Assembly: GCA_950097015.1 (NCBI GenBank)
Contig: CATNEN010000029.1
Coordinates: 372,001 to 436,000 of the forward strand
DNA length: 64,000 nt
Reading direction: 5' to 3'
DNA from: Macrostomum hystrix
Lineage: Eukaryota; Animalia; Platyhelminthes
The translations under genes were made by a program, and so were the position numbers. Numbering within the stretch: the stretch's first letter is position 1; each line of letters starts with the position of its first letter. This document shows, piece by piece, positions 1,507 through 25,300 of the stretch. The notes beneath the pieces were generated by a model that saw nothing but the letters and a program-made list of their open reading frames with translations, did no database searches and was not told the origin of the DNA.

Positions 1507-2165
1507 TCAATATTCCATCTCTTCGTCAGAGATCTCGCGGCCAAAGCGAAACGGCATGTGCACAGTATCGTCCCGCTTGCCCCAGCGGAACACGTTGGGA
1601 GCCCGCTTGCCCCAGCGGAACACGTTTGGAGACCTCTTGCCCCAGCGGAACACGTTGGGAGCCCGCTTGCTCTCAGGCCAATCATAATAGACCGTCTCCT
1701 CGGCCGATGGGCCCGCGAATTCAACGCCCAGAATCCTGCCCGGAGCCATTCGTTTGCCGCGCTTCAGTTCGGCCGTCGGTGAAGAATCATCTGCGGGACG
1801 GGATGCGCACGGGAGGCGGGATATCAGGATGGCTTAGGGCATCAAGAAATTATTCGAGGACGGAAGTGCGTCGAGTCCAGCAGCTTTTTTAATTTTCTTG
1901 TTCGGCAGTGCAGCTTCCTCAATTTGCTGTCCGTGTGCGGGAAATAATGCTGTCCGTTTGATTCGTGAAGCTAATGCACAGTATTCTAATCAAATACCAA
2001 TTCACGCGGATCTTTAATATAAATAATTTCTTTCTGAGAAAAGTCAGTTTCGGACTGCAGCACGTGAGCTGAAACATGCTTACCATTGGTGCCACGTCCA
2101 TTTGATTGCGCAATCAGACACATTAGCGCTAAGCCGCACACTAGCATGATAGTTCTGTGAATCAT
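1507..2165 (-). CDS. Neuropeptide precursor (2x APNVFRWamide, SPNVFRWamide, DDTVHMPFRFamide), 121 aa, 2 coding exons
   Basis: complement(join(2084..2165,1507..1790)) = 366 nt. Exon 1 encodes a hydrophobic signal peptide, MIHRTIMLVCGLALMCLIAQSNG, and ends at a phase-1 G|GTAAG donor. The acceptor CCCGTCCCGCAG| at 1791 is also phase 1. Exon 2 encodes ...KR-APNVFRWG-KR-SPNVFRWG-KR-APNVFRWG-KR-DDTVHMPFRFG-R-EISDEEMEY*, with dibasic cleavage sites and Gly amide donors. Confidence 0.93.
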
Positions 2166-4225
2166 TGCTGCTTGCTGATAGGCAATAACTGTCTTCTGTC
2201 CTCCAGTAAGCTTCGCTATTGTCGATCGAGACCTGTGAAATCGAGGATAGAAAAAGATGCATGCAGTTGCCAGATTGACTACAATATATTTGGAAGCCTA
2301 TATATTTTTTAGCAATGATAGCTTACCCCAGAGTAAGAGTTTGCCGGCGGAGAGATTGAAAGCAAGGAGAATTATTCGAGCCAGTTTTCTAGTGCATTTT
2401 ATAGGCCGGCTGGAGAAAACTTCCGCAGCCCCGCCAACCGCACAGCCAACCGTTGCAGATTCTCCGCACGTTGATGACTAGTCACTGGGCGGATCAAACT
2501 TCGGCGCAGGTGATTGGCTGCCTCAGCTGAAACTAGAATATTGTCGAAGCTAACTTATTTGGATATTTTTTAGCATGCGGAGATCTGTTTTTCTTGAATA
2601 AATTTAAATAAAAATTGTAAATAAATTGCCAATTATGGTTTCGCTGTCTGGCGCGGTCGTAGATGAAAATGCTGCAATTCAATTATAGATGTAAAATGTG
2701 AACTACGTACGTCGAAAAAACTCATTAAGGGAATTTCCCGTAACCTCGTTGCCTCTCGAAAAATATAAACGCTTAGCTCTCAGATGAATTAAAAACTTAA
2801 AATCGCACGTAGTAAATACCAACATATGATGGATATGACACTTGTTCAATGCCACCACAAACAAAAAGCAATGATCTCATTTGGGAGAACCAAGAACCAC
2901 TAGGAAAAACTTATCATCCTTGGCGAGAACATTTTTTAGATTATAAAAAGAGCCACTCTGTAAGTGGTTTATAATTGTAATCAAGAATGAAATGATTACA
3001 CTATAGAATGAATATAATGAAAGTATTTAAGTAGGCCCTAGTCACTTTTACGATTATTAGTTCGTATTTGACAGCAATTTTTTATTTAGCGACTGATGTC
3101 ATAACTTCATCATAGTTTTATTATTTTAAAAGTATATCTAATTCTTTACTTCATATTTGGGTTATTTTATTTGCGTAATAGACTCAATCACATTTTTAAT
3201 TTAACTAGGCCCCTATTGAAATTTGAAGTTGCTGTTCTGCGACGATTTTCCAAGATATATGAGTCCTACATATTCAATTTTAAGTATCATTACCAATAAG
3301 CGCATGAGACATACAGATGGATATAATAGACATGTTTGGATTAACTAATATATAATATATGTAACTAACTATATAACTAACTAATATATAACTAACTAGT
3401 ATATGTACATTTTTCTAATCATTTGTCAGCCTGATAGTTTAATAAATTGAAACAATTTCCTTTATTCAGAATTAATGCAAACACTGTAGTATTTAAGTAT
3501 ACTAATTGTGTACTATTTATATTTCCTTATTCTTATTTAAATTACAGGAAAGAAAAAACCTTCTGCATTGGTTTCCAACTTCAAAATAAACAAAAGTGAT
3601 GATATTCCTTTATGTGTGTGTACTTTTTATAACCATGTACAATACCCAAACAGTCAATCCACTATTCCACTTAGCCACATTAGTATTTTATTAACTGAAA
3701 AAATAATGTACATATAGTCCTTAGGTGGCATTAGGCCTGTTGTGTAATAGTAAATTATATTCAATAAATTTTAGAGTATCACCAAGCTTCAATTGTTTTC
3801 TTTGATTCTTGGAATGTGAAAAATAAACAAACCAGTTTTACACTGTTAGTTTAGCTAAGTATTTTGCTTTACAATTTAGTTAGCTTTCTGAAAATTAATT
3901 ATATCTGTTTTCTTTGATTAGCTTTAAAGCTAGCTAGGCTTGACAGGAGCTAAGATGTGTAGGACATTATGTAGTGTATATATATATACTAGCTTTTTTT
4001 GCCCGTTGTTTTTGGGGCAGAAATTTAAAGCAAAGCAGTAAGCAATTCACGTCTCTGTATTAACTTTATAGTGAAGGTCACCATTTATTTATTTACTGCA
4101 TTAATGAAAAGTGAAGAGTTTGTTTAAGGGCGTTTTAAGTAAAAAATAAGTGAAAAGTTTGTCCAAACAGCCCCCTCTTGATTACTTCTTTAGAAACATG
4201 TCTCTTAGCCACTCCTCTATACAGT

Positions 4226-4660: not shown

Positions 4661-5640
4661 TCACCTCAAGGCCTGGGGATACACCACATTCTTCGTTCTT
4701 CCCCTTGGTGCAAAAATGAATAGGCCAGCTGGAGTTCCAACACGGGAGCAGGCGACATAAAGCTGCCCATGCGAGAAGCAAGGAGTCTCCAGGTTGATGC
4801 CAGCCATGCACCTTCAGCGACTGTCCCTGAGCCTTGTTAATAGTCATCGCAAAGCACACTCTCACAGGGAACTGCAGTCGCTTGAACTGAAATGGCAGGT
4901 CCGTGGGGATAATTGGAATCCGGGAACAAACACAGACTCTCCTCTGCCAGATCCAGTCATTATCGTGGCCTCAATCACGTGTGGGAAGAGCCGCCTGACT
5001 ATCAGTCTGGTGCCGTTACACAGCCTTGGCGCATTCAGGTTGTGGAGGAGCATAATTGGTGCCCCAACTTTCAGCTGCAAGTTGTGCGATGGAGTTCCAG
5101 GAGGATCTAGAGAGTTCAGAAACTCAACAGGATACTCCACAGCGGTGTCATCAGTCAACGTTGTATCAATTGACTTGTAGGTGAAAACTGCACCTGGCAA
5201 CTCCTGAAGCAGTTGGTAGTTAATTTCGTTGGCGGCATCATTTCTAGGACACAGAATAGCCCTCTCTGACAGCCAGTCAACGTCAGCATATCGAACCATC
5301 AGGTTCGGGTAAACTTTTGCCTTGAGCTCCTGCACTGACTGCACAATGGTTCCGATTGTAGCGATCGATGACTGCCCATCCTCGGTGCTAATCTCCAGCA
5401 GATCATTGCCGATTCGCAATAGATTGGCAGAGAACTCATGAGCTGTTTCGTCTCCTTGAATTGTAGCTCTCATGTTTGTTCGTACAGGTGCAACTTCACA
5501 ACCGATGGCCACAGGTGAGATGATTTTAGGCAAGCATTAATCTCATCAGCAGGAGTGCCACGAGGAATCACAGGCAGCGTCTGTCTAAAGTCTCCAGACA
5601 GCAGCAGAGTGACACCACCCATCAGTTGATCGCCAGCCTC
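4661..5640 (-). pseudogene. Helitron helicase C-terminal fragment with frameshifts
   Basis: Motifs are split across ORFs 5470..5715, 4862..5533 and 4635..4865, so at least two or three frameshifts are needed to join them. Confidence 0.88.
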
Positions 5641-13333: not shown

Positions 13334-16300
13334 CTAGAACTCCACCCTGAAGGCGGTGCAAATCTTGTCTTCGGCTTCGTCGCCCTGCTGTTGCAGCCGG
13401 ATGCGGCAGTCGGAGGCGCTGGGCGCCAGGGTGACGCGCAACTGCTGCATCCGGCTGGCATTGCCGGCTAGCCAGTTGTTGAACAGCTGATTGCTGTGCG
13501 TTGGAATCAGGGTGACCTCCGGCTCAGGCCAGGCCGACTTGCCCTCCAGCAGGGCGTCTAGAATGGCTGGCTGCGGATCGCAGCTGCTCAGCACGTAGTA
13601 TCTGGCGCGGACCCGCTTGAAATACTCGGCGTCGGCGTACTGGCGCTCACCGTGGCCGGGCACGTACGCCAGGTCGAAGTGCAGCGGATGCACCGGGCCG
13701 TAGTTTACGGCGGGATGAGCAGCGGCCGAGCCAGGCTTGGGTTTTGCCGGAGCCGGGGCCGGTGCGGGAGCGGGCAGGCCGAGTGGCTCGTCAACGGTGA
13801 TTAGCTCGGCGGTGTCAGCTTCGGCGCTGTTAGTGTTGTTGGCATTCAGCTCCCAGGCTTCATGATGACCCTCTTGATGCACCCCATCGGCCTGCTGCTC
13901 CTCCGACTGGTGATGCTCCTGCTGGAACAAGTCGGGGTGCCACGCTTCAACCCTAGCCAGGTTGCTGGAATGTGGTGTACAACCCTAACCAGGTTGCTAG
14001 GACGTGGTGTACAACCCTAACCAGGTTGCTGGAATGTGGTGTACAACCCTAACCAGGTTGCTGGAATGTGGTGCACAACCCGAACCAGGTTGCTAGGATG
14101 TGGTGTACAACCCTAACCAGGTTGCTGGAATGTGGTGTACAACCCTAACCAGGTTGCTAGGACGTGGTGTACAACCCTAACCAGGTTGCTGGAATGTGGT
14201 GCACAACCCGAACCAGGTTGCTAGGATGTGGTGTACAAACCTAACCAGGTTGCTATGATGTGGTGCACAACCCGAACCAGGTTTCTAGGATGTGGTGTAC
14301 AACCCTAAACAGGTTGCTGGAATGTGGTGCACAACCCGAACCAGGTTGCTAGGATGTGGTGTACAACCCTAACCAGGTTGCTGGAATGTGGTGTACAACC
14401 CTAACCAGGTTGCTAGGACGTGGTGTACAACCCTAACCAGGTTGCTGGAATGTGGTGCACAACCCGAACCAGGTTGCTAGGATGTGGTGTACAAACCTAA
14501 CCAGGTTGCTATGATGTGGTGCACAACCCGAACCAGGTTTCTAGGATGTGGTGTACAACCCTAAACAGGTTGCTGGAATGTTGTGTACAACCCTAACCAG
14601 GTTGCTAGGATGTGGTGTACAACCCTAACCAGGTTGCTGGAATGTAAAAACGTTCAGTTTCGAGCCTCACTGTGTCAGCATCGGCGCCTGAAGTTTCAGC
14701 CAGTGAAATCTCTTCGACAGCCGCCGCAGCCTCAGGCTCGTGCTGCTCAGTCACCAGATTCTCGTCAGCCGTCGTAGCCGCAGGGGCGGCAGCCGGAGCT
14801 GCAGCAGAAGCAGCCGCAGGCTTAGCAATCTTTCGTCCAGCGATAGGTTTCGCCGGCGCCGCCTTGGCAGCCGGAGCAGCAGCTGCAGACTTGGCAGGCT
14901 CCTTCTTAGCAACGGCAGCCGGCTTGGCCGACGAAGCAGACACCGACTTAGACGCTGCCGATGCTGACGACTTGGAGCCGGGAGCGGCAGCAGTTTTGCC
15001 AGGATCGCCGGAGGATGCGACCGGCTTCTTGACAATGGGAGCAGCAGCAGCAGCAGCTGGGGCCTTCTTGACCGGAGCAGCTGCGGGAGCCGGTTTCGGC
15101 TTAGGCTTGGCAGCAGCCGAGGTGGCGGCGTGGTCGCCGGAGGCTGCGGGCGCGGGCTTTTTAGGAGCAGCGCTAGTAGGCTTGTGAGCAGCCGCACTAG
15201 CCGGGATGTACTCGGCCGACTTTAGGCAGTCCAGTCCGCGGACCTTCTCCAGGCCTTCAATGACTCGCAGCTGCGGGCAGCAGCCGGGCAGCAGTAGGCG
15301 AGTCCAGGCCAGCTTGGGATCGCTGGGCCGCCAGACCAGCAGGCAGCAGAGCGAATTGGCGTGCGAAGGGCTGGCGTGGCAGAGTCCAATCCGAGCCAAC
15401 TGCCAGGGCTTGCCACCGGCTGAGGCTGCCTGCGACTGCAGTTGGGCCACGAAGTCTTTGAACTCCTTGCCGTCGGCCACCGGCTGCAGCGGATACAGGT
15501 CCAGAGCGCCGTTGCCCAGCTTGCTGTAGAGCGTCACTGGCTGCGGCTGCCCGGTGCCCAGCCGGCGCACCTCCTCCAGGTGCACGTTGAGGCCGCGCAA
15601 AAGGCGCACGGCCGTGGCCGAGTCGCGCCGGACGCTGGCCTCAAGCCGGTGCTGGCCGCCGTTGGACGCCTCATCCTCGGCGGCTGGCTTAGGGCGGCAG
15701 GGCAGCAGGGCGCAGCCCAGGGTGGGGGCGCCGCCAGCTTCCTTGGCCGACAGTCGCTCCAGCAGGGCCAGCAGTCCGGGCAGATTGTCGTGATCCCAGT
15801 GGCTCAGTAGGAGGCCGTCAAGCTGCGGGTTTGTTTATTGAGTAGGTTTGGCATTGCACTTTAGCATGCCAAACTGGAAACTAAGAAACTGGCTGAACAT
15901 GACAATGCATTTAGATTCAGGACACTGCGATGGGACTTCAGGACACTGCGATGGGACTTCAGGACATCACGGGACTTCAGGACACTGCGATGGGACTTCA
16001 GGACACTGCGATGGGACTTCAGGACACTGCGATGGGACTTCAGGACACTGCGATGGGACTTCAGGACACTGCGATGGGACTTCAGGACACTGCGATGGGA
16101 CTTCAGGACACTGCGATGGGACTTCAGGACACTGCGATGGGACTTCAGGACACTGCGATGGACTTCAGGACACTGCGATGGGACTTCAGGACACTGCGAT
16201 GGGACTTCAGGACACTGCGATGGGACTTCAGGACACTGCGATGGGACTTCAGGACACTGCGATGGGACTTCAGGACACTGCGATGGGACTTCAGGACATC

Positions 16301-19300: not shown

Positions 19301-22300
19301 ATGGCTTGAACAAAATCTGTGATTGATTTTCTGTTCATTGGTGAACTTGGGTCAACAGGAGCGGGAGAAAGAGAGCTACATCTAAATTACTTTACCTTTC
19401 TTTGTACGAAAAATGCTAAGCCTCTCTGTGAAATCTATCTTTCAGTTGTTTACGAACTTATTAATATTATTATTATATGTTTATATTGCGTTCGAATTAA
19501 TCTCACTCAAACGCGCACAATACAAAATAAACAAGACAATAATAAAAACTAGGTCAGTTATCAGTCGCATGCTCAAATCGAAATTTTGAGAATGCTTCAC
19601 CGCAGCAAACTATTATCAGCAAGAAGGCAGGAAAAATTTCTAAGCAATTTCTTTCGAGCAAATATGAAGAACCGCCAGAAACTATACCCACACTCCGCAC
19701 ACAGAGCCAGACGACACAGAACATATACTAGGCCGATAGGTACAATAAGGGGAAGGCGAGAGAAGAAGCAGATAGAGAATAGAGCAGGAATGAGAACATA
19801 GAATTGAGTATATAGTCCCACGCGCTGAGCAATCTGACTGTACCCTGGCTCACCTCAAGTCTGACGAGTGCAATCTAGAATGCTGTCTAATAGCGTCACT
19901 ATCACAATACACAAGTCTGTGCAGCGATAGTCTTTTCTAAATAGACAACCCCTTCAGGTCATTGGCACCTTGCTGTTATATCTGCTGTTGGTTGCGTTCA
20001 AGAAAAATACTTCTATTTATAACTATGCAACCATAAATGAAGCTATATGCATAGGCGACTCAAAGGGACGACTGTCTGGAGTCACGGGATGATTCTTACT
20101 GGAGTCACGAGATGATTCTTACTGGAGTCACGGGATGATTCTTACTGGAGTCACGGGGTGAGGTGATTCTTACTGGAGTCACGGGGTGATTCTTACTGGA
20201 GTCACGGGGTGAGGTGATTCTTACTGGAGTCACGGGATGATTCTTACTGGAGTCATGGGATGATTCTTACTGGAGTCACGGGGTGATTCTTACTGGAGTC
20301 ACGGGATGATTCTTACTGGAGTCACGGGATGATTCTTACTGGACTCACGGGATGATTCTTACTGGAGTCACGAGATGATTCTTACTGGAGTCACGGGATG
20401 ATTCTTACTGGAGTCACGGGGTGAGGTGATTCTTACTGGAGTCACGGGGTGATTCTTACTGGAGTCACGGGGTGAGGTGATTCTTACTGGAGTCACGGGA
20501 TGATTCTTACTGGGGTCACGGGATGATTCTTACTGGGGTCACGGGATGATTCTTACTGGAGTCACGGGATGATTCTTACTGGAGTCACGGGATGATTCTT
20601 ACTGGAGTCACGGGATGATTCTTACTGGAGTCACGGGATGATTCTTACTGGAGTCACGGGACGATTCTTACTGGAGTCACGGGATGATTCTTACTGGAGT
20701 CACGGGATGATTCTTACTGGATTCACGGGACGATTCTTACTGGAGTCACGGGATGATTCTTACTGGAGTCACGGGATGATTCTTACTGGAGTCACGGGGT
20801 GAGGTGATTCTTACTGGAGTCACGGGGTGATTCTTACTGGAGTCACGGGGTGATTCTTACTGGAGTCACGGGGTGAGGTGATTCTTACTGGAGTCACGGG
20901 ATGATTCTTACTGGGGTCACGGGATGATTCTTACTGCGGTCACGGGATGATTCTTACTGGAGTCACGGGATGATTCTTACTGGAGTCACGGGATGATTCT
21001 TACTGGAGTCACGGGATGATTCTTACTGGAGTCACGGGATGATTCTTACTGGAGTCACGGGACGATTCTTACTGGAGTCACGGGATGATTCTTACTGGAG
21101 TCACGGGATGATTCTTACTGGAGTCACGGGATGATTCTTACTGGATTCACGGGACGATTCTTACTGGAGTCACGGGATGATTCTTACTGGAGTCACGGGA
21201 TGATTCTTACTGGAGTCACGGGATGATTCTTACTGGAGTCACGGGGTGAGGTGATTCTTACTGGAGTCACGGGGTGATTCTTACTGGAGTCACGGGGTGA
21301 GGTGATTCTTACTGGAGTCACGGGATGATTCTTACTGGGGTCACGGGATGATTCTTACTGGGGTCACGGGATGATTCTTACTGGAGTCACGGGATGATTC
21401 TTACTGGAGTCACGGGATGATTCTTACTGGAGTCACGGGATGATTCTTACTGGAGTCACGGGATGATTCTTACTGGAGTCATGGGATGATTCTTACTGGA
21501 GTCACGGGGTGATTCTTACTGGAGTCACGGGATGATTCTTACTGGAGTCACGGGATGATTCTTACTGGAGTCACGGGATGATTCTTACTGGAGTCACGAG
21601 ATGATTCTTACTGGAGTCACGGGATGATTCTTACTGGAGTCACGGGGTGAGGTGATTCTTACTGGAGTCACGGGGTGATTCTTACTGGAGTCACGGGGTG
21701 AGGTGATTCTTACTGGAGTCACGGGATGATTCTTACTGGGGTCACGGGATGATTCTTACTGCGGTCACGGGATGATTCTTACTGGAGTCACGGGATGATT
21801 CTTACTGGAGTCACGGGATGATTCTTACTGGAGTCACGGGATGATTCTTACTGGAGTCACGGGATGATTCTTACTGGAGTCACGGGACGATTCTTACTGG
21901 AGTCACGGATGATTCTTACTGGAGTCACGGGATGATTCTTACTGGAGTCACGGGATGATTCTTACTGGATTCACGGGACGATTCTTACTGGAGTCACGGG
22001 ATGATTCTTACTGGAGTCACGGGATGATTCTTACTGGAGTCACGGGATGATTCTTACTGGAGTCACGGGGTGAGGTGATTCTTACTGGAGTCACGGGGTG
22101 ATTCTTACTGGAGTCACGGGGTGAGGTGATTCTTACTGGAGTCACGGGATGATTCTTACTGGAGTCACGGGATGATTCTTACTGGAGTCACGGGGTGATT
22201 CTTACTCGAGTCACGGGATGATTCTTACTGGAGTCACGGGATGATTCTTACTAGCGTCACGGGATGATTCTTACGCTGGCGTCACGGGATGATTCTTACA

Positions 22301-25300
22301 CTGGAGTCACGGGATGATTCTCACTGGAGTCACGGGATGATTCTCACTGGAGTCACGGGATGATTCTTACTGGAGTCACGGGATGATTCTTACTGGAGTC
22401 ACGGGATGATTCTTACTGGAGTCACGGGATGATTCTTACTGGAGTCACGGGATGATTCTTGCTAGAATTAGGGCGATTCTTACTAGAGTTGGGACGATTC
22501 TTTCTGGTATTGGGACGATTCTTTCTGCTATTGGGACGATTCTTTCTGCTATTGGGACGATTCTTTCTGGTATTGGGACGATTCTTTCTGCTATTGCTTC
22601 GATTTTATCTCTAGTTGGGATGATTCTTACTGGAGTCACGGGATGATTCTTACTGGAGTCTCGGGATGATTCTTACTGGAGTCACTGGATGATTCTTACT
22701 GGAGTCACGGATGATTCTTACTGGAGTCACGGGATGATTCTTGCTAGAATTAGGGCGATTCTTACTAGAGTTGGGACGATTCTTTCTGGTATTGGGACGA
22801 TTCTTTCTGGTATTGGGACGATTCTTTCTGCTATTGGGACGATTCTTTCTGGTATTGGGACGATTCTTTCTGCTATTGGGACGATTCTTTCTGGTATTGG
22901 GATGATTCTTTCTGGTATTGGGACGATTCTTTCTGCTATTGGGACGATTCTTTCTGGTATTGGGACGATTCTTTCTGGTATTGGGACGATTCTTTCTGCT
23001 ATTGGGACGATTCTTTCTGGTATTGGGACGATTCTTTCTGCTATTGGGACGATTTTTTCTGGTATTGGGACGATTCTTTCTGCTATTGCTTCGATTTTAT
23101 CTCTAGTTGGGATGATTCTACCTAAAATTATAGCGCCGATTTTACACTGACTAAAATGGGGTATGGTTCTGCCAAGGATCAAGACAAGAGTTTTCTTGGT
23201 GTACAAACTAAAGCAAAAGATATTTGAATAAAACACTTCTCAAGCACTGACTACAGAGATCAGTTGACCGGGTGCATTCAGAAAAAAAGCTAGCCCACAA
23301 AGTAGCAACAGCACCCAGTCCTAAATGCTTTCTAAACTGTTTGAAGTGACTCAGAGCAGCCGCTCTTTAAGACTCTCCCCAGACTCGACCTCCACCCGGC
23401 CTTCCATTTTCTTTCCGAGTTTAATAACTTAAACTGGAAGTCTTCTCCGTATGAATTGTACACTAGCTATTGAATTCGCATGCGAACTAAACCCTGCCTT
23501 AGCCATACTAGCTTGTAAACAATAAAGCCATTCTCTATGTTTCTTAGAATCGGCCACTACTTTACTCTCAGCATAAAGACAGCTCGGTAGACGCCACTCG
23601 CCAGTTCTATCAGGCGGTCTCGATTCCGCTGCAAATACAGTTAAGCTAATAACACATAAAAAATATCAGCTTACAGAATTGGCAGCGGAGAAACCCGCCC
23701 CCTACATATGCATGCGTAATTAGAGTATTGAACACCCCAGCCTGGCACACTTCTCTGACATAAGCACCGATTAATAATTCAGGGCTCGCATAGATTTTGC
23801 AATAAGTACTATTTAAGACTAGTTCAAAATGACATCAACCAAGGCTAGAACGAACCATTGTACATTCTTTTATGAAATAGCATGGATAGTGAAATTGAAA
23901 CTGACAACAATTAAAAGAATCAGTGCATGAGCTGAAATCAAACTCACCTTTCTCATTTTCGTTGAAGCTCTGCGGACTGGGATTTGAAGAAACGAAAGTT
24001 TTTAACTCTTCATTGATGTCGAATCCTAATGAGCTGGTGTCCCAGGAATTCACACCTGCACAAATTCATTGTTACCATTTAAGTTCATTTTTATCAATAA
24101 GAATATATATATATATGCATATAAGTGATATTAACTTGGGCAAGCAGATGGTAATTTTTTTCATTGTAGCAAACCAGCAAAAAGTCTTAAGATCTAAATT
24201 TCTAAGCAAACAGAAGCAAAAAAATGTATTGCTTGCATCAATATATGTACAATAAGACTAAAACTTAAATTTTTTTATTAGCTAGTCTTAAAGCTCTAGT
24301 CTAACCACTATGGCCTAGAAAAATGTGACACTATGACAGAAAGTGCATTTTGCTTTTTAACTGGCTAGCTATATCACTGCATCAGCATCTCTAGACATAG
24401 CCATTATAATACATAATTCTAAGCTCATATATTAGTTTGCTATCCTTGGTAGGGTATATAGACAAGACCTACATGTTTAGTTATATTTAATCTAGTTCTA
24501 AATTACTTTTTGTCTTAATTAGGACCAATTAGGACAAATTAATTCACACTATTAATTTGAGTGATCTACATAATTATAATTCTATAGACCCAGTATAGCA
24601 TTAGGCATTAGGCCTCTATAATTATATTATTAGCAAATGTTCTTTAAGATCTAGACCTTTTATATAATTATTCTTTTATAATTGTAGGAGAGCTACAGGC
24701 ATGGTACATCATTTGGTGACCCTAGACCTGTAGCCAGCAAGGAGGCGACTCTGCCCATTCCACTGACTTCTGAGCACACTATGCACATAGATATCATATG
24801 CTGGCATAGTTTAGACAGGTCTGCACATTGGCCTTGACTTTCTTGTCATCAGGCAGTATACACTTTCACAATGCCTTGGAAGTTGGCCCTTAAGGATATA
24901 AATTGCATAACAAGTCCCCTCTTTTACTTCTCTCTGCAGCTGCAACCCAAATAAATCTGGCCTTGCCACAGACTCGAGCTCAAGGACCTGCAATAGGCAA
25001 ACAGATTAGATTGCTCTGCCATTCCCAAAATAGGCCTATAAGGTAATAATCAAAATGATATTTTTTGATACATTTTTTGTAAAATTTACAAACTTTTAGA
25101 AAATAAAGTTGCTGGGCAAATTATGAAAAATAATAGCTAGACCTACTAATAGAATTAAAAAAAGTCTACATTGTAGATATTTAAAATAAGGCTTGATATG
25201 CCCAGACATTAAATTCATTTTTTTTAGTTTTTCTTATTTAAAAATAAGGCAAAAATATAGAATAAGGTCTGGACTAAATTCAAAGCCCGATTCTTTACTT

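What the first reader, a model, noticed from the sequence alone, without database searches (positions are those of the whole stretch)
1507..2165. Hidden two-exon neuropeptide precursor making three VFRW-amides and one PFRF-amide
The ORF track shows only an 80-aa fragment. A signal-peptide exon 300 bp upstream splices in phase to give a complete 121-aa prohormone. Predicted products are APNVFRW-NH2 (x2), SPNVFRW-NH2 and DDTVHMPFRF-NH2. The xFRWa ending resembles annelid LFRWamide/VFRYamide and molluscan LFRFamide (short-NPF-type, by inference). The last peptide has a different pattern: an acidic N-terminus and His six residues from the end, as in myosuppressin-type HxxxRFa. One precursor may therefore supply two receptor classes. 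Short precursors like this are often missed by annotation.
Basis: partly seen in the sequence, partly recalled or inferred. Interest (0 to 1): 0.78.

Follow-up and report, generated by a model that had tools for sequence, protein, structure and literature searches.

The report
Flatworm VFRWamide (sNPF-type) neuropeptide gene
This is a real two-exon gene of a Macrostomum flatworm for a small secreted hormone precursor, but it is an ordinary member of the LFRFamide/RYamide ("short neuropeptide F") family known from molluscs, annelids and planarians, and the "odd" last peptide is that family's usual tail.

Summary
On the minus strand, exon 1 (2165-2084, signal peptide) joins exon 2 (1790-1507) through a GT..AG phase-1 intron. 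The result is a 121-codon precursor with three (A/S)PNVFRW-Gly-Lys-Arg units and a final DDTVHMPFRF-Gly-Arg.

The assembly matches Macrostomum hystrix (220 Mb, 42 contigs). M. lignano has full-length orthologues that span both exons (PAA79965.1; PAA56779.1, auto-named "FMRFamide-related neuropeptides"; 77% identity to exon 2).

A profile search recovered the annelid RYamide/LFRYamide and mollusc LFRFamide precursors. Of 60 hits, 33 end with H-x-P-[F/W]-R-F-Gly as their last peptide, as this gene does. So the last peptide is the family's conserved tail. It is not a myosuppressin-like addition.

The genome holds two further VFRWamide genes without the tail, which share the phase-1 intron. It also holds two intronless MFRY/MFRFamide genes that resemble planarian npp-4, and a second identical copy of this gene inside a >44-kb duplication.

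Expression, amidation and the receptor are untested.

Verdict: a new member of a known kind, of modest interest. Another window of this scan read the same stretch (s1-363663).

The parts
2296..2304 (-). TATA-like motif TATATAGGC, about 135 nt upstream of the ATG (putative core promoter)
   Evidence: Single match in the window (expected 0.32 by chance, so weak alone). A similar (T/G)ATATAGGC lies 135-195 nt upstream of the ATG in both VFRWamide paralogues. Its role as a promoter is inferred.
2084..2165 (-). Exon 1 coding part: start codon, signal peptide (cleavage predicted after about residue 23, S-N-G) and first base of the split Asp codon
   Evidence: Hydrophobic core. Aligns to residues 1-28 of M. 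lignano P0001.
1791..2083 (-). Phase-1 intron, 293 nt, GTAAGC...pyrimidine tract...CAG
   Evidence: The only two differences between the two genomic copies over 1700 bp lie in this intron, at 1955 and 1813. Both paralogues have a phase-1 intron at the same place.
1507..1790 (-). Exon 2: remainder of the precursor and the stop codon
   Evidence: 77% identical to M. lignano P0061 over its whole length.
1663..1788 (-). Pro-region: short N-terminal piece, K-R-G-K-R, a 27-residue acidic/aromatic spacer and the K-R before the first peptide
   Evidence: Conserved in outline in M. lignano.
1633..1662 (-). Peptide unit 1: APNVFRW + Gly-Lys-Arg, predicted to give APNVFRW-amide
1603..1632 (-). Peptide unit 2: SPNVFRW + Gly-Lys-Arg, predicted to give SPNVFRW-amide
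1573..1602 (-). Peptide unit 3: APNVFRW + Gly-Lys-Arg, predicted to give APNVFRW-amide
1537..1572 (-). Family tail: DDTVHMPFRF + Gly-Arg, predicted to give DDTVHMPFRF-amide. Arg at P4 fits a monobasic cleavage site.
   Evidence: H, P, R, F and G are invariant in a 14-sequence alignment with annelid and mollusc precursors. 33 of 60 profile hits carry the motif as their last peptide.
1507..1536 (-). Acidic C-terminal extension (9 residues) and TGA stop
   Evidence: Mollusc and some annelid precursors likewise end with G-R-E plus acidic residues.

Best explanation
The region is an intact two-exon protein-coding gene of a macrostomid flatworm (the assembly matches Macrostomum hystrix). It encodes a 121-residue prepro-neuropeptide of the lophotrochozoan LFRFamide / RYamide / NPP-4 family, the protostome short-neuropeptide-F (sNPF) type.

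The inferred pathway is as follows. The signal peptide directs the protein into the secretory route and is removed after about residue 23. Prohormone convertase cuts at the Lys-Arg pairs and at the Arg-x-x-Arg-type site after the tail. A carboxypeptidase trims the basic residues. Peptidylglycine alpha-amidating monooxygenase converts each C-terminal Gly into an amide. The products are two APNVFRW-amide, one SPNVFRW-amide and one DDTVHMPFRF-amide. By analogy with oyster and abalone LFRFamides, the short peptides most likely act on an sNPF-type G-protein-coupled receptor.

Shown here: the gene structure, the orthologues, family membership by sequence and architecture, and the paralogues. Inferred: transcription, processing, amidation and the receptor.
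For: The gene model is supported by several results. The exons, splice sites and phase were read directly. M. lignano proteins P0001 (108 aa) and P0061 (117 aa) run continuously across both exons, with 46% identity to exon 1 and 77% to exon 2. The peptide cores and the tail DDTVHMPFRFGRE are identical, while the spacers are less conserved.

Family membership rests on a profile search of exon-2 translations plus P0001. It hit Urechis FRWamide (1.5e-16), Capitella (5.9e-11), the Platynereis neuropeptide precursor F8UKT9 (7e-7), Mytilus, Argopecten, Argonauta and Ostrea LFRFamide-type precursors (1e-5 to 6e-3) and Urechis LFRYamide. Of the 60 hits, 33 have H-x-P-[FW]-R-F-G 2-22 residues from the C-terminus, as this gene does. 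H, P, R, F and G are invariant in alignment A2.

The literature agrees. Mollusc LFRFamide precursors end in PHTPFRFamide (PMC4208409 sect. 5; PMC5996578 sect. 24). [quoted passage not shown]

Two paralogues share a phase-1 intron just after the signal peptide. The genome has PHM-type copper monooxygenase loci. The assembly size and contig count match M. hystrix (PMC10468722).
Against: Reciprocal searches of this genome with oyster and Platynereis precursors give only weak hits (E 0.004-0.9), and this locus is not the top hit.

Repeat-rich short precursors inflate profile scores, and the query profile contained the tail-less paralogues.

The tail motif alone occurs at chance frequency genome-wide (4 matches against 3 in the control). 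Its weight therefore comes only from its position as the last peptide after the FRW units.

Pfam has no model that matches.

In most annelid precursors the tail Gly is followed by acidic residues, not a basic one, so the tail may not always be an amidated ligand.
Confidence: 0.78

Rival explanations
1. The precursor carries two signals. The short VFRW-amides serve an sNPF-type receptor, and the conserved H-x-P-F-R-F tail is a separate ligand for another receptor class. This is the first reader's myosuppressin-type idea, or alternatively one of the orphan lophotrochozoan W/Y/F-amide receptors.
For: The tail is conserved across flatworm, annelid and mollusc precursors independently of the short copies. 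His sits six residues from the end and the N-terminus is acidic, as in arthropod myosuppressins (own knowledge). Reviews state that three oyster LFRFamide peptides activate the sNPF receptor and do not mention the tail peptide (PMC6389622). Thiel et al. note orphan receptors in the protostome W/Y/F-amide group.
Against: The C-terminus is P-F-R-F, not the F-L-R-F of myosuppressin. Myosuppressin precursors carry one peptide only. The tail is explained more simply as part of the LFRFamide/RYamide architecture. In most annelid members no basic residue follows the tail Gly, so amidation is doubtful there. No receptor data exist.
Confidence: 0.12
2. The gene is a flatworm-specific FRW-amide gene that resembles sNPF/LFRFamide precursors only by convergence. 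Short RF/RW-amide repeats evolve easily, and the tail match would be coincidental.
For: The reciprocal searches are weak. The tail motif occurs by chance a few times per genome. The Urechis authors regarded their FRWamide gene as lineage-specific (PMC7737342). Two intronless MFRY/MFRFamide genes in the same genome look more like planarian npp-4.
Against: The match goes well beyond a shared amide ending. A seven-residue motif sits in the same place, as the last peptide, followed by G-R-E plus an acidic end as in molluscs and Owenia. It is preceded by x-F-R-[FYW]-G-K-R units, and annelid members of the tailed class always include one or two FRW units.
Confidence: 0.08
3. The region is a non-functional or untranscribed ORF: a chance reading frame, a pseudogene or a duplication relic.
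For: No canonical AATAAA lies directly after the stop.
Against: The frame, signal peptide and splice sites are intact in both genomic copies, and the only differences between them are intronic. The orthologues in M. lignano have identical peptide cores but diverged spacers. The motif count against the control is 17 to 0.
Confidence: 0.02

Closest known systems
Macrostomum lignano proteins PAA79965.1/PAA88281.1 (BOX15_Mlig013963g1/g2, 108 aa) and PAA56779.1 (BOX15_Mlig021438g1, 117 aa; UniProt A0A1I8G2F4, auto-named 'FMRFamide-related neuropeptides')
   Same: These are orthologues with the same architecture: signal peptide, K-R-G-K-R, spacer, NVFRW-GKR units and an identical DDTVHMPFRFGRE tail. 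Identity to exon 2 is 77%.
   Different: They have two or three units, with ANVFRW in place of SPNVFRW or APNVFRW, and shorter spacers. They are recorded only as hypothetical or auto-named proteins. I found no paper describing them.
Mollusc LFRFamide (sNPF-type) precursors, e.g. Ostrea, Crassostrea, Mytilus, Argopecten, Argonauta (P0041, P0026, P0028, P0032)
   Same: Signal peptide, an early basic site plus an acidic spacer, several x-[FL]-R-[FY]-G-K-R units, and a last peptide ...P-H-T-P-F-R-F-G-R-E followed by an acidic end (PMC4208409).
   Different: The mollusc units end in F- or Y-amide, not W-amide. Their tail has P-H-T-P where this gene has V-H-M-P. Their precursors are longer, with more units. 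Their receptor is known (an sNPFR-like GPCR), whereas here it is not.
Annelid RYamide / LFRYamide (sNPF-type) precursors, e.g. Platynereis F8UKT9 (P0019) and Urechis LFRYamide (P0059)
   Same: They mix FRY-, MRY- and one or two FRW-amide units and carry the P-H-V-P-F-R-F-G tail as the last element.
   Different: The annelid tail Gly is mostly followed by Asp, Glu or Lys and the stop codon, with no basic cleavage site. W-amide units are the minority there, but the only short units here.
Schmidtea mediterranea npp-4 (VFRF-, AFRF- and VFRY-amides, confirmed by mass spectrometry; Collins et al. 2010, PMC2953531)
   Same: It is a flatworm x-V-F-R-[FY]-amide multi-copy precursor and is probably the sequence used as the planarian sNPF-type precursor in PMC7314547 (that identification is my inference).
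   Different: It has no H-x-P-F-R-F tail and no W-amide, and it ends in FRY-Gly-stop. In this genome the intronless C3 gene (GMFRY-, QMFRF- and AYMFRY-amide) looks more like it. The npp-4 sequence was read in the paper only and was not run through tools.
Annelid FRWamide genes (Urechis unicinctus FRWamide MT162138 = P0004; Capitella CAPTEDRAFT_185359 = P0010) and the Macrostomum precursor Mlig032062.g1
   Same: They carry x-F-R-W-G-K-R repeats. The peptide GRTNNKNVFRW-amide from Mlig032062.g1 was synthesised and tested on DEG/ENaC channels without effect (PMC9234716). Its M. hystrix counterpart is the C38 paralogue.
   Different: These have FRW-amide units only and no tail. They match the tail-less paralogues on C6 and C38 rather than the window gene.
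Arthropod myosuppressin (x-D-V-x-H-x-F-L-R-F-amide; own knowledge)
   Same: Acidic N-terminus, His six residues from the end, an RF-amide end, and a position at the C-terminal end of the precursor.
   Different: The ending is P-F-R-F, not F-L-R-F. The peptide here is part of a multi-peptide precursor, and the match to the LFRFamide/RYamide tail is far closer.

Membership tests
Lophotrochozoan LFRFamide / RYamide / NPP-4 (sNPF-type) precursors | N-terminal signal peptide on a small precursor | tested here: met
   Exon 1 translation has a basic n-region and a hydrophobic core with Kyte-Doolittle means up to 2.9, followed by S-N-G. It aligns to the orthologue's N-terminus. No SignalP was available.
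Lophotrochozoan LFRFamide / RYamide / NPP-4 (sNPF-type) precursors | Several short units ending x-[F/L/M]-R-[F/Y/W] followed by Gly and a dibasic site | tested here: met
   Three (A/S)PNVFRW-G-K-R units.
Lophotrochozoan LFRFamide / RYamide / NPP-4 (sNPF-type) precursors | Last peptide of the precursor is ...H-x-P-F-R-F-Gly, close to the C-terminus | tested here: met
   V-H-M-P-F-R-F-G-R-E lies 10 residues from the end. 33 of 60 family hits have the motif 2-22 residues from the end. The columns are invariant in A2. PHTPFRFamide is described in PMC4208409 and PMC5996578.
Lophotrochozoan LFRFamide / RYamide / NPP-4 (sNPF-type) precursors | Significant sequence similarity to named members | tested here: met
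   Profile search: Platynereis F8UKT9 at 7e-7, Mytilus at 1.5e-5, Argopecten at 2.9e-5, against 5.8 billion sequences. Caveat: these are repetitive short sequences, and the profile included the paralogues.
Lophotrochozoan LFRFamide / RYamide / NPP-4 (sNPF-type) precursors | Reciprocal best match in this genome | tested here: inconclusive
   With oyster P0041, the C6 paralogue scores 0.004 and this locus 0.03 (tail region, 51% identity). With Platynereis P0019, only the other RY/RW-amide genes score at E<=1.
Lophotrochozoan LFRFamide / RYamide / NPP-4 (sNPF-type) precursors | Peptides activate an sNPF-type GPCR | not testable with these tools
   Shown for oyster and abalone only (PMC6389622, PMC9071130).
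Lophotrochozoan LFRFamide / RYamide / NPP-4 (sNPF-type) precursors | Transcribed, spliced and processed to amidated peptides | not testable with these tools
Only the capacity for amidation is indicated, by PHM-type loci.
Myosuppressin | Single peptide per precursor ending H-x-F-L-R-F-amide | tested here: not met
   The ending is H-M-P-F-R-F, and the precursor also carries three other peptides.
Luqin / RYamide (luqin-type) | One peptide directly after the signal peptide, and a C-terminal motif with two cysteines | tested here: not met
   There is no Cys in the exon 2 translation. The peptides are separated from the signal peptide by a spacer of about 45 residues.
NPF / NPY | A 36-40-residue peptide ending R-x-R-F/Y-amide, with an intron inside the Arg codon of the RF/RY end (PMC7314547) | tested here: not met
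   The peptides are 7-10 residues long. The only intron lies just after the signal peptide.
FMRFamide (FaRP) precursors | Many F-[ML]-R-F-Gly tetrapeptide units | tested here: not met
   There are no FMRF or FLRF units and no Pfam match. Macrostomum has a separate FMRF/YMRF-amide propeptide (PMC9234716).
Annelid FRWamide-only genes (Urechis FRWamide) | FRW-amide units only, with no H-x-P-F-R-F tail | tested here: not met
   The window gene has the tail. The C6 and C38 paralogues fit this pattern.

The most novel reading that the evidence does not exclude
The H-x-P-F-R-F tail may be an ancient second signal, or a sorting element, with a role of its own. It would have been kept for more than 500 million years in flatworms, annelids and molluscs. 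In Macrostomum the ancestral mixed precursor may have been split among genes: FRW-amide plus tail here, FRW-amide only on C6 and C38, and MFRY/MFRF-amide on C3 and C30. That split would offer a natural dissection of which peptide class serves which receptor, possibly including an orphan W/Y/F-amide receptor.
Probability: 0.15. Interest if true: 0.6.

Novelty: new member of a known kind. Interest (0 to 1): 0.33.

Why it matters
The gene gives the M. hystrix genome a correctly modelled sNPF-type prohormone gene, present in two identical copies. It also shows that an early-branching flatworm keeps the diagnostic tail peptide of the annelid and mollusc LFRFamide/RYamide precursors, which planarian npp-4 lacks. 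That ties flatworm x-F-R-[FYW]-amides to the sNPF family by architecture as well as by the amide ending. It also supplies exact peptides for receptor deorphanisation in a tractable flatworm genus. It does not reveal a new kind of signalling system.

Tried and rejected
The following led nowhere or were left out.

- **The look-up of encoding contigs:** I tried it for the M. lignano orthologue, to compare exon and intron conservation and to look for transcripts.
- The exons were searched separately by reference.
- **Pfam scan** of both exons, the paralogues and known family members: no family matched.
- **ESM Atlas** with P0061: only generic small-prohormone look-alikes (DH31, tachykinin, gastrin, NPFF, PBAN) at 0.88-0.91. 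These are a lead only.
- **Reciprocal searches** of the genome with oyster and Platynereis precursors were too weak to assign one-to-one orthology.
- **Other own-genome hits:**
  - Some were tandem repeats (L006, L007).
  - Others were different peptide families: ASYVRM-, ASFVRL- and AGLLHF-amide.
  - The H-C-P-F-R-F-G match on C30 is a chance ORF.
- **PMC9234716 supplement:** it does not hold the Mlig032062.g1 propeptide.
- **Schmidtea npp-4:** the sequence was read in a paper supplement but has no reference, so it was not put through any tool.
- **Phase-1 intron:** it resembles the one in PrRP-type genes, but I gave this no weight, because phase-1 introns after signal peptides are common (own knowledge).
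- **Large representative-protein search and structure prediction:** not used, because the word search had already settled the family.
- **Receptor search:** not attempted, for lack of a referenced query.

Full report
**What is there**

On the minus strand an ATG at 2165 opens an 82-nt exon. Its 27 codons give a basic N-terminus, a strongly hydrophobic core and S-N-G. The exon ends G|GTAAGC. After a 293-nt intron with a pyrimidine-rich 3' end and CAG, exon 2 starts at 1790. The split codon G+AT reads Asp, so the intron is phase 1.

The frame then runs to TGA at 1509-1507. It holds a short N-terminal piece, K-R-G-K-R, a 27-residue spacer, K-R, three (A/S)PNVFRW-G-K-R units, DDTVHMPFRF-G-R and a nine-residue acidic end. 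The total is 121 codons. Each exon was handled by reference.

**Is it more than chance?**

The degenerate DNA pattern for V-F-R-W-G-K-R occurs 17 times in the genome, against 0 for the reversed control, and all matches fall in four loci. F-R-W-G-K-R gives the same loci plus one stray match.

**Organism**

The window is C29:372,001-436,000 of a 220,453,370-base assembly in 42 contigs. That matches the published Macrostomum hystrix assembly, "~220 Mb ... 42 contigs" (PMC10468722). The only close database proteins are from M. lignano.

**Support for the gene model**

- The word search with exon 2 found one protein, M. lignano BOX15_Mlig013963g1 (P0001, 108 aa). It starts with a signal peptide that aligns to exon 1 (46% identity) and continues without a break into the exon 2 sequence.
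- A cluster mate, P0061 (PAA56779.1, 117 aa), has three NVFRW units. It is 77% identical to exon 2 and is auto-named "FMRFamide-related neuropeptides" in UniProt.
- The peptide cores and DDTVHMPFRFGRE are identical between the species, while the spacers differ. This is the usual conservation pattern for prohormones.
- A second copy of the gene lies 5.07 Mb away on the same contig, inside a collinear duplication of more than 44 kb that is 96-99% identical. Over 1700 bp around the gene the copies differ at two positions, both in the intron.

**Paralogues in the same genome**

- C6:~417.2-417.75 kb encodes GTTFRW-, QSGVFRW- and five PSGVFRW-amide units. Its M. lignano orthologue is P0002.
- C38:~18.577 Mb encodes six G(G/R)(T/A)NNKNVFRW-amide units. 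This is the counterpart of Macrostomum propeptide Mlig032062.g1. Dandamudi et al. synthesised its peptide GRTNNKNVFRW-amide and found it inactive on FaNaC-related channels (PMC9234716).
- Both paralogues have a phase-1 intron a few residues after the signal peptide, as here, and a (T/G)ATATAGGC motif 135-195 nt upstream of the ATG. Neither has the PFRF tail.
- Two further intronless genes encode QMFRY-amide (seven copies, plus one QMYRY-amide; C30:2,652,249-2,652,728) and GMFRY-, QMFRF- and AYMFRY-amide (C3:~6,329,232-6,329,540). The C3 gene ends FRY-Gly-stop, like planarian npp-4.

**Which family**

A profile of the exon-2 translations plus P0001 (alignment A1) found 60 proteins. Named hits include:

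- Urechis FRWamide and LFRYamide
- Capitella CAPTEDRAFT_185359
- the Platynereis neuropeptide precursor F8UKT9
- Owenia and Paralvinella proteins
- Mytilus, Argopecten, Argonauta, Mactra and Ostrea RF-amide precursors

Reading them and scoring them by script shows two classes:

- **Tailed class:** 33 of the 60 mix x-[FLM]-R-[FYW]-G-K-R units and end with H-x-P-[FW]-R-F-G, 2-22 residues from the C-terminus.
- **Untailed class:** the others carry FRW- or LRW-amide units only.

The window gene belongs to the tailed class. In a 14-sequence alignment the H, P, R, F and G of the tail are invariant. The flatworm tail is followed by G-R-E and an acidic end, as in molluscs, Owenia and some unnamed hits.

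The literature describes this class as the LFRFamide (mollusc) or RYamide/LFRWamide (annelid) gene, regarded as the lophotrochozoan sNPF type:

- PHTPFRFamide is listed as the last peptide in Sepia, Crassostrea and Patinopecten precursors (PMC4208409; PMC5996578).
- LFRFamides activate oyster and abalone sNPF receptors (PMC6389622; PMC9071130).
- Yanez-Guerra et al. list a Schmidtea sNPF-type precursor and state that sNPF-type receptors exist in that flatworm (PMC7314547).

The sNPF-type inference stands. The claim that the last peptide follows a "different pattern ... myosuppressin-type" does not. The peptide is the family's own conserved tail.

Whether that tail has its own receptor is open. 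Its conservation suggests a function. However, most annelid members lack a basic residue after the tail Gly, which argues against a universally amidated ligand.

The tail motif by itself occurs at chance frequency in the genome (4 matches against 3 in the control). One other match is a chance ORF. Its evidential weight therefore lies in its position and context.

**Limits**

- The reciprocal searches are weak, so orthology is many-to-one. Among at least six related genes, this is the only one in the genome that keeps the tail.
- Pfam has no model for the family.
- The Atlas search gave only generic prohormone look-alikes.
- PHM-type monooxygenase loci exist, so amidation is plausible.

**Verdict**

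This is a real, intact neuropeptide precursor gene and a new member of a known kind. Its modest evolutionary point is that a macrostomid flatworm retains the LFRFamide/RYamide tail that planarian npp-4 has lost. Another window of this scan had already read the same stretch (s1-363663).

Noticed in passing
window 1-24037 and upstream (C29:352,001-396,037) versus C29:5,426,825-5,470,000: A collinear duplication in the same orientation, more than 44 kb long and 96-99% identical, lies 5.07 Mb away on the same contig. It runs off both ends of the DNA I fetched. It contains a second intact copy of the neuropeptide gene. It could be a recent segmental duplication or an uncollapsed haplotype.
   Followed up: partly
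window 20076-23088: A minisatellite of about 116 copies of a 23-bp unit (90% matches), followed by 30 copies of a 21-bp unit. It is also present, with different register and length, in the duplicate segment.
   Followed up: partly
L003 (G000:C6:~417,100-417,750, + strand): Paralogous two-exon VFRWamide gene encoding GTTFRW-, QSGVFRW- and five PSGVFRW-amide units. It has no PFRF tail and the same phase-1 intron. AATAAA lies about 15 nt after the stop. Its M. lignano orthologue is PAA47094.1.
   Followed up: partly
L008 (G000:C38:~18,576,970-18,577,540, + strand): Paralogous two-exon gene with six G(G/R)(T/A)NNKNVFRW-amide units, ending G-K-stop. It is the counterpart of Macrostomum propeptide Mlig032062.g1 used in PMC9234716. 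The PW-amide peptide reported for M. lignano is not evident here.
   Followed up: partly
L040 (G000:C30:2,652,249-2,652,728, +) and L041 (G000:C3:~6,329,232-6,329,540, -): Two intronless RY/RF-amide precursor genes. One (159 aa) has seven QMFRY-amide units and one QMYRY-amide unit. The other (102 aa) encodes GMFRY-, QMFRF- and AYMFRY-amide and ends FRY-Gly-stop, like planarian npp-4.
   Followed up: partly
L033 (G000:C25:~8,656,900-8,657,600, -), L034 (G000:C30:~872,000-872,640, +), L035 (G000:C5:~857,700-858,600, -): Other multi-copy amidated-peptide precursors: 13 ASYVRM-amide units, 11 ASFVRL-amide units (FVRI-amide-like) and 18 AGLLHF-amide units. The last was already noted by the scan as s1-327250.
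   Followed up: no
window 4865-5533 (-) and 14608-15609 (-): The nearest sizeable ORFs are a Pif1-helicase 2B-domain fragment (possibly from a Helitron-like element) and an exon with a MAP1B MBL-like domain. Neither is related to the neuropeptide gene.
   Followed up: no
genome-wide (e.g. G000:C1:2,096,756; about 80 places): The exact 17-mer TTTCGTTTTGGAAAACG recurs across nearly all contigs. It is presumably part of a dispersed repeat, and it swamps pattern searches for F-R-F-G-K-R.
   Followed up: no
window 1735-1749 (-): Directly after K-R-G-K-R the pro-region reads M-A-P-G-R in both Macrostomum species, and a scallop LFRFamide precursor has K-K-R-M-A-P at a similar place. This could be a minor processing product or a coincidence.
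   Followed up: no
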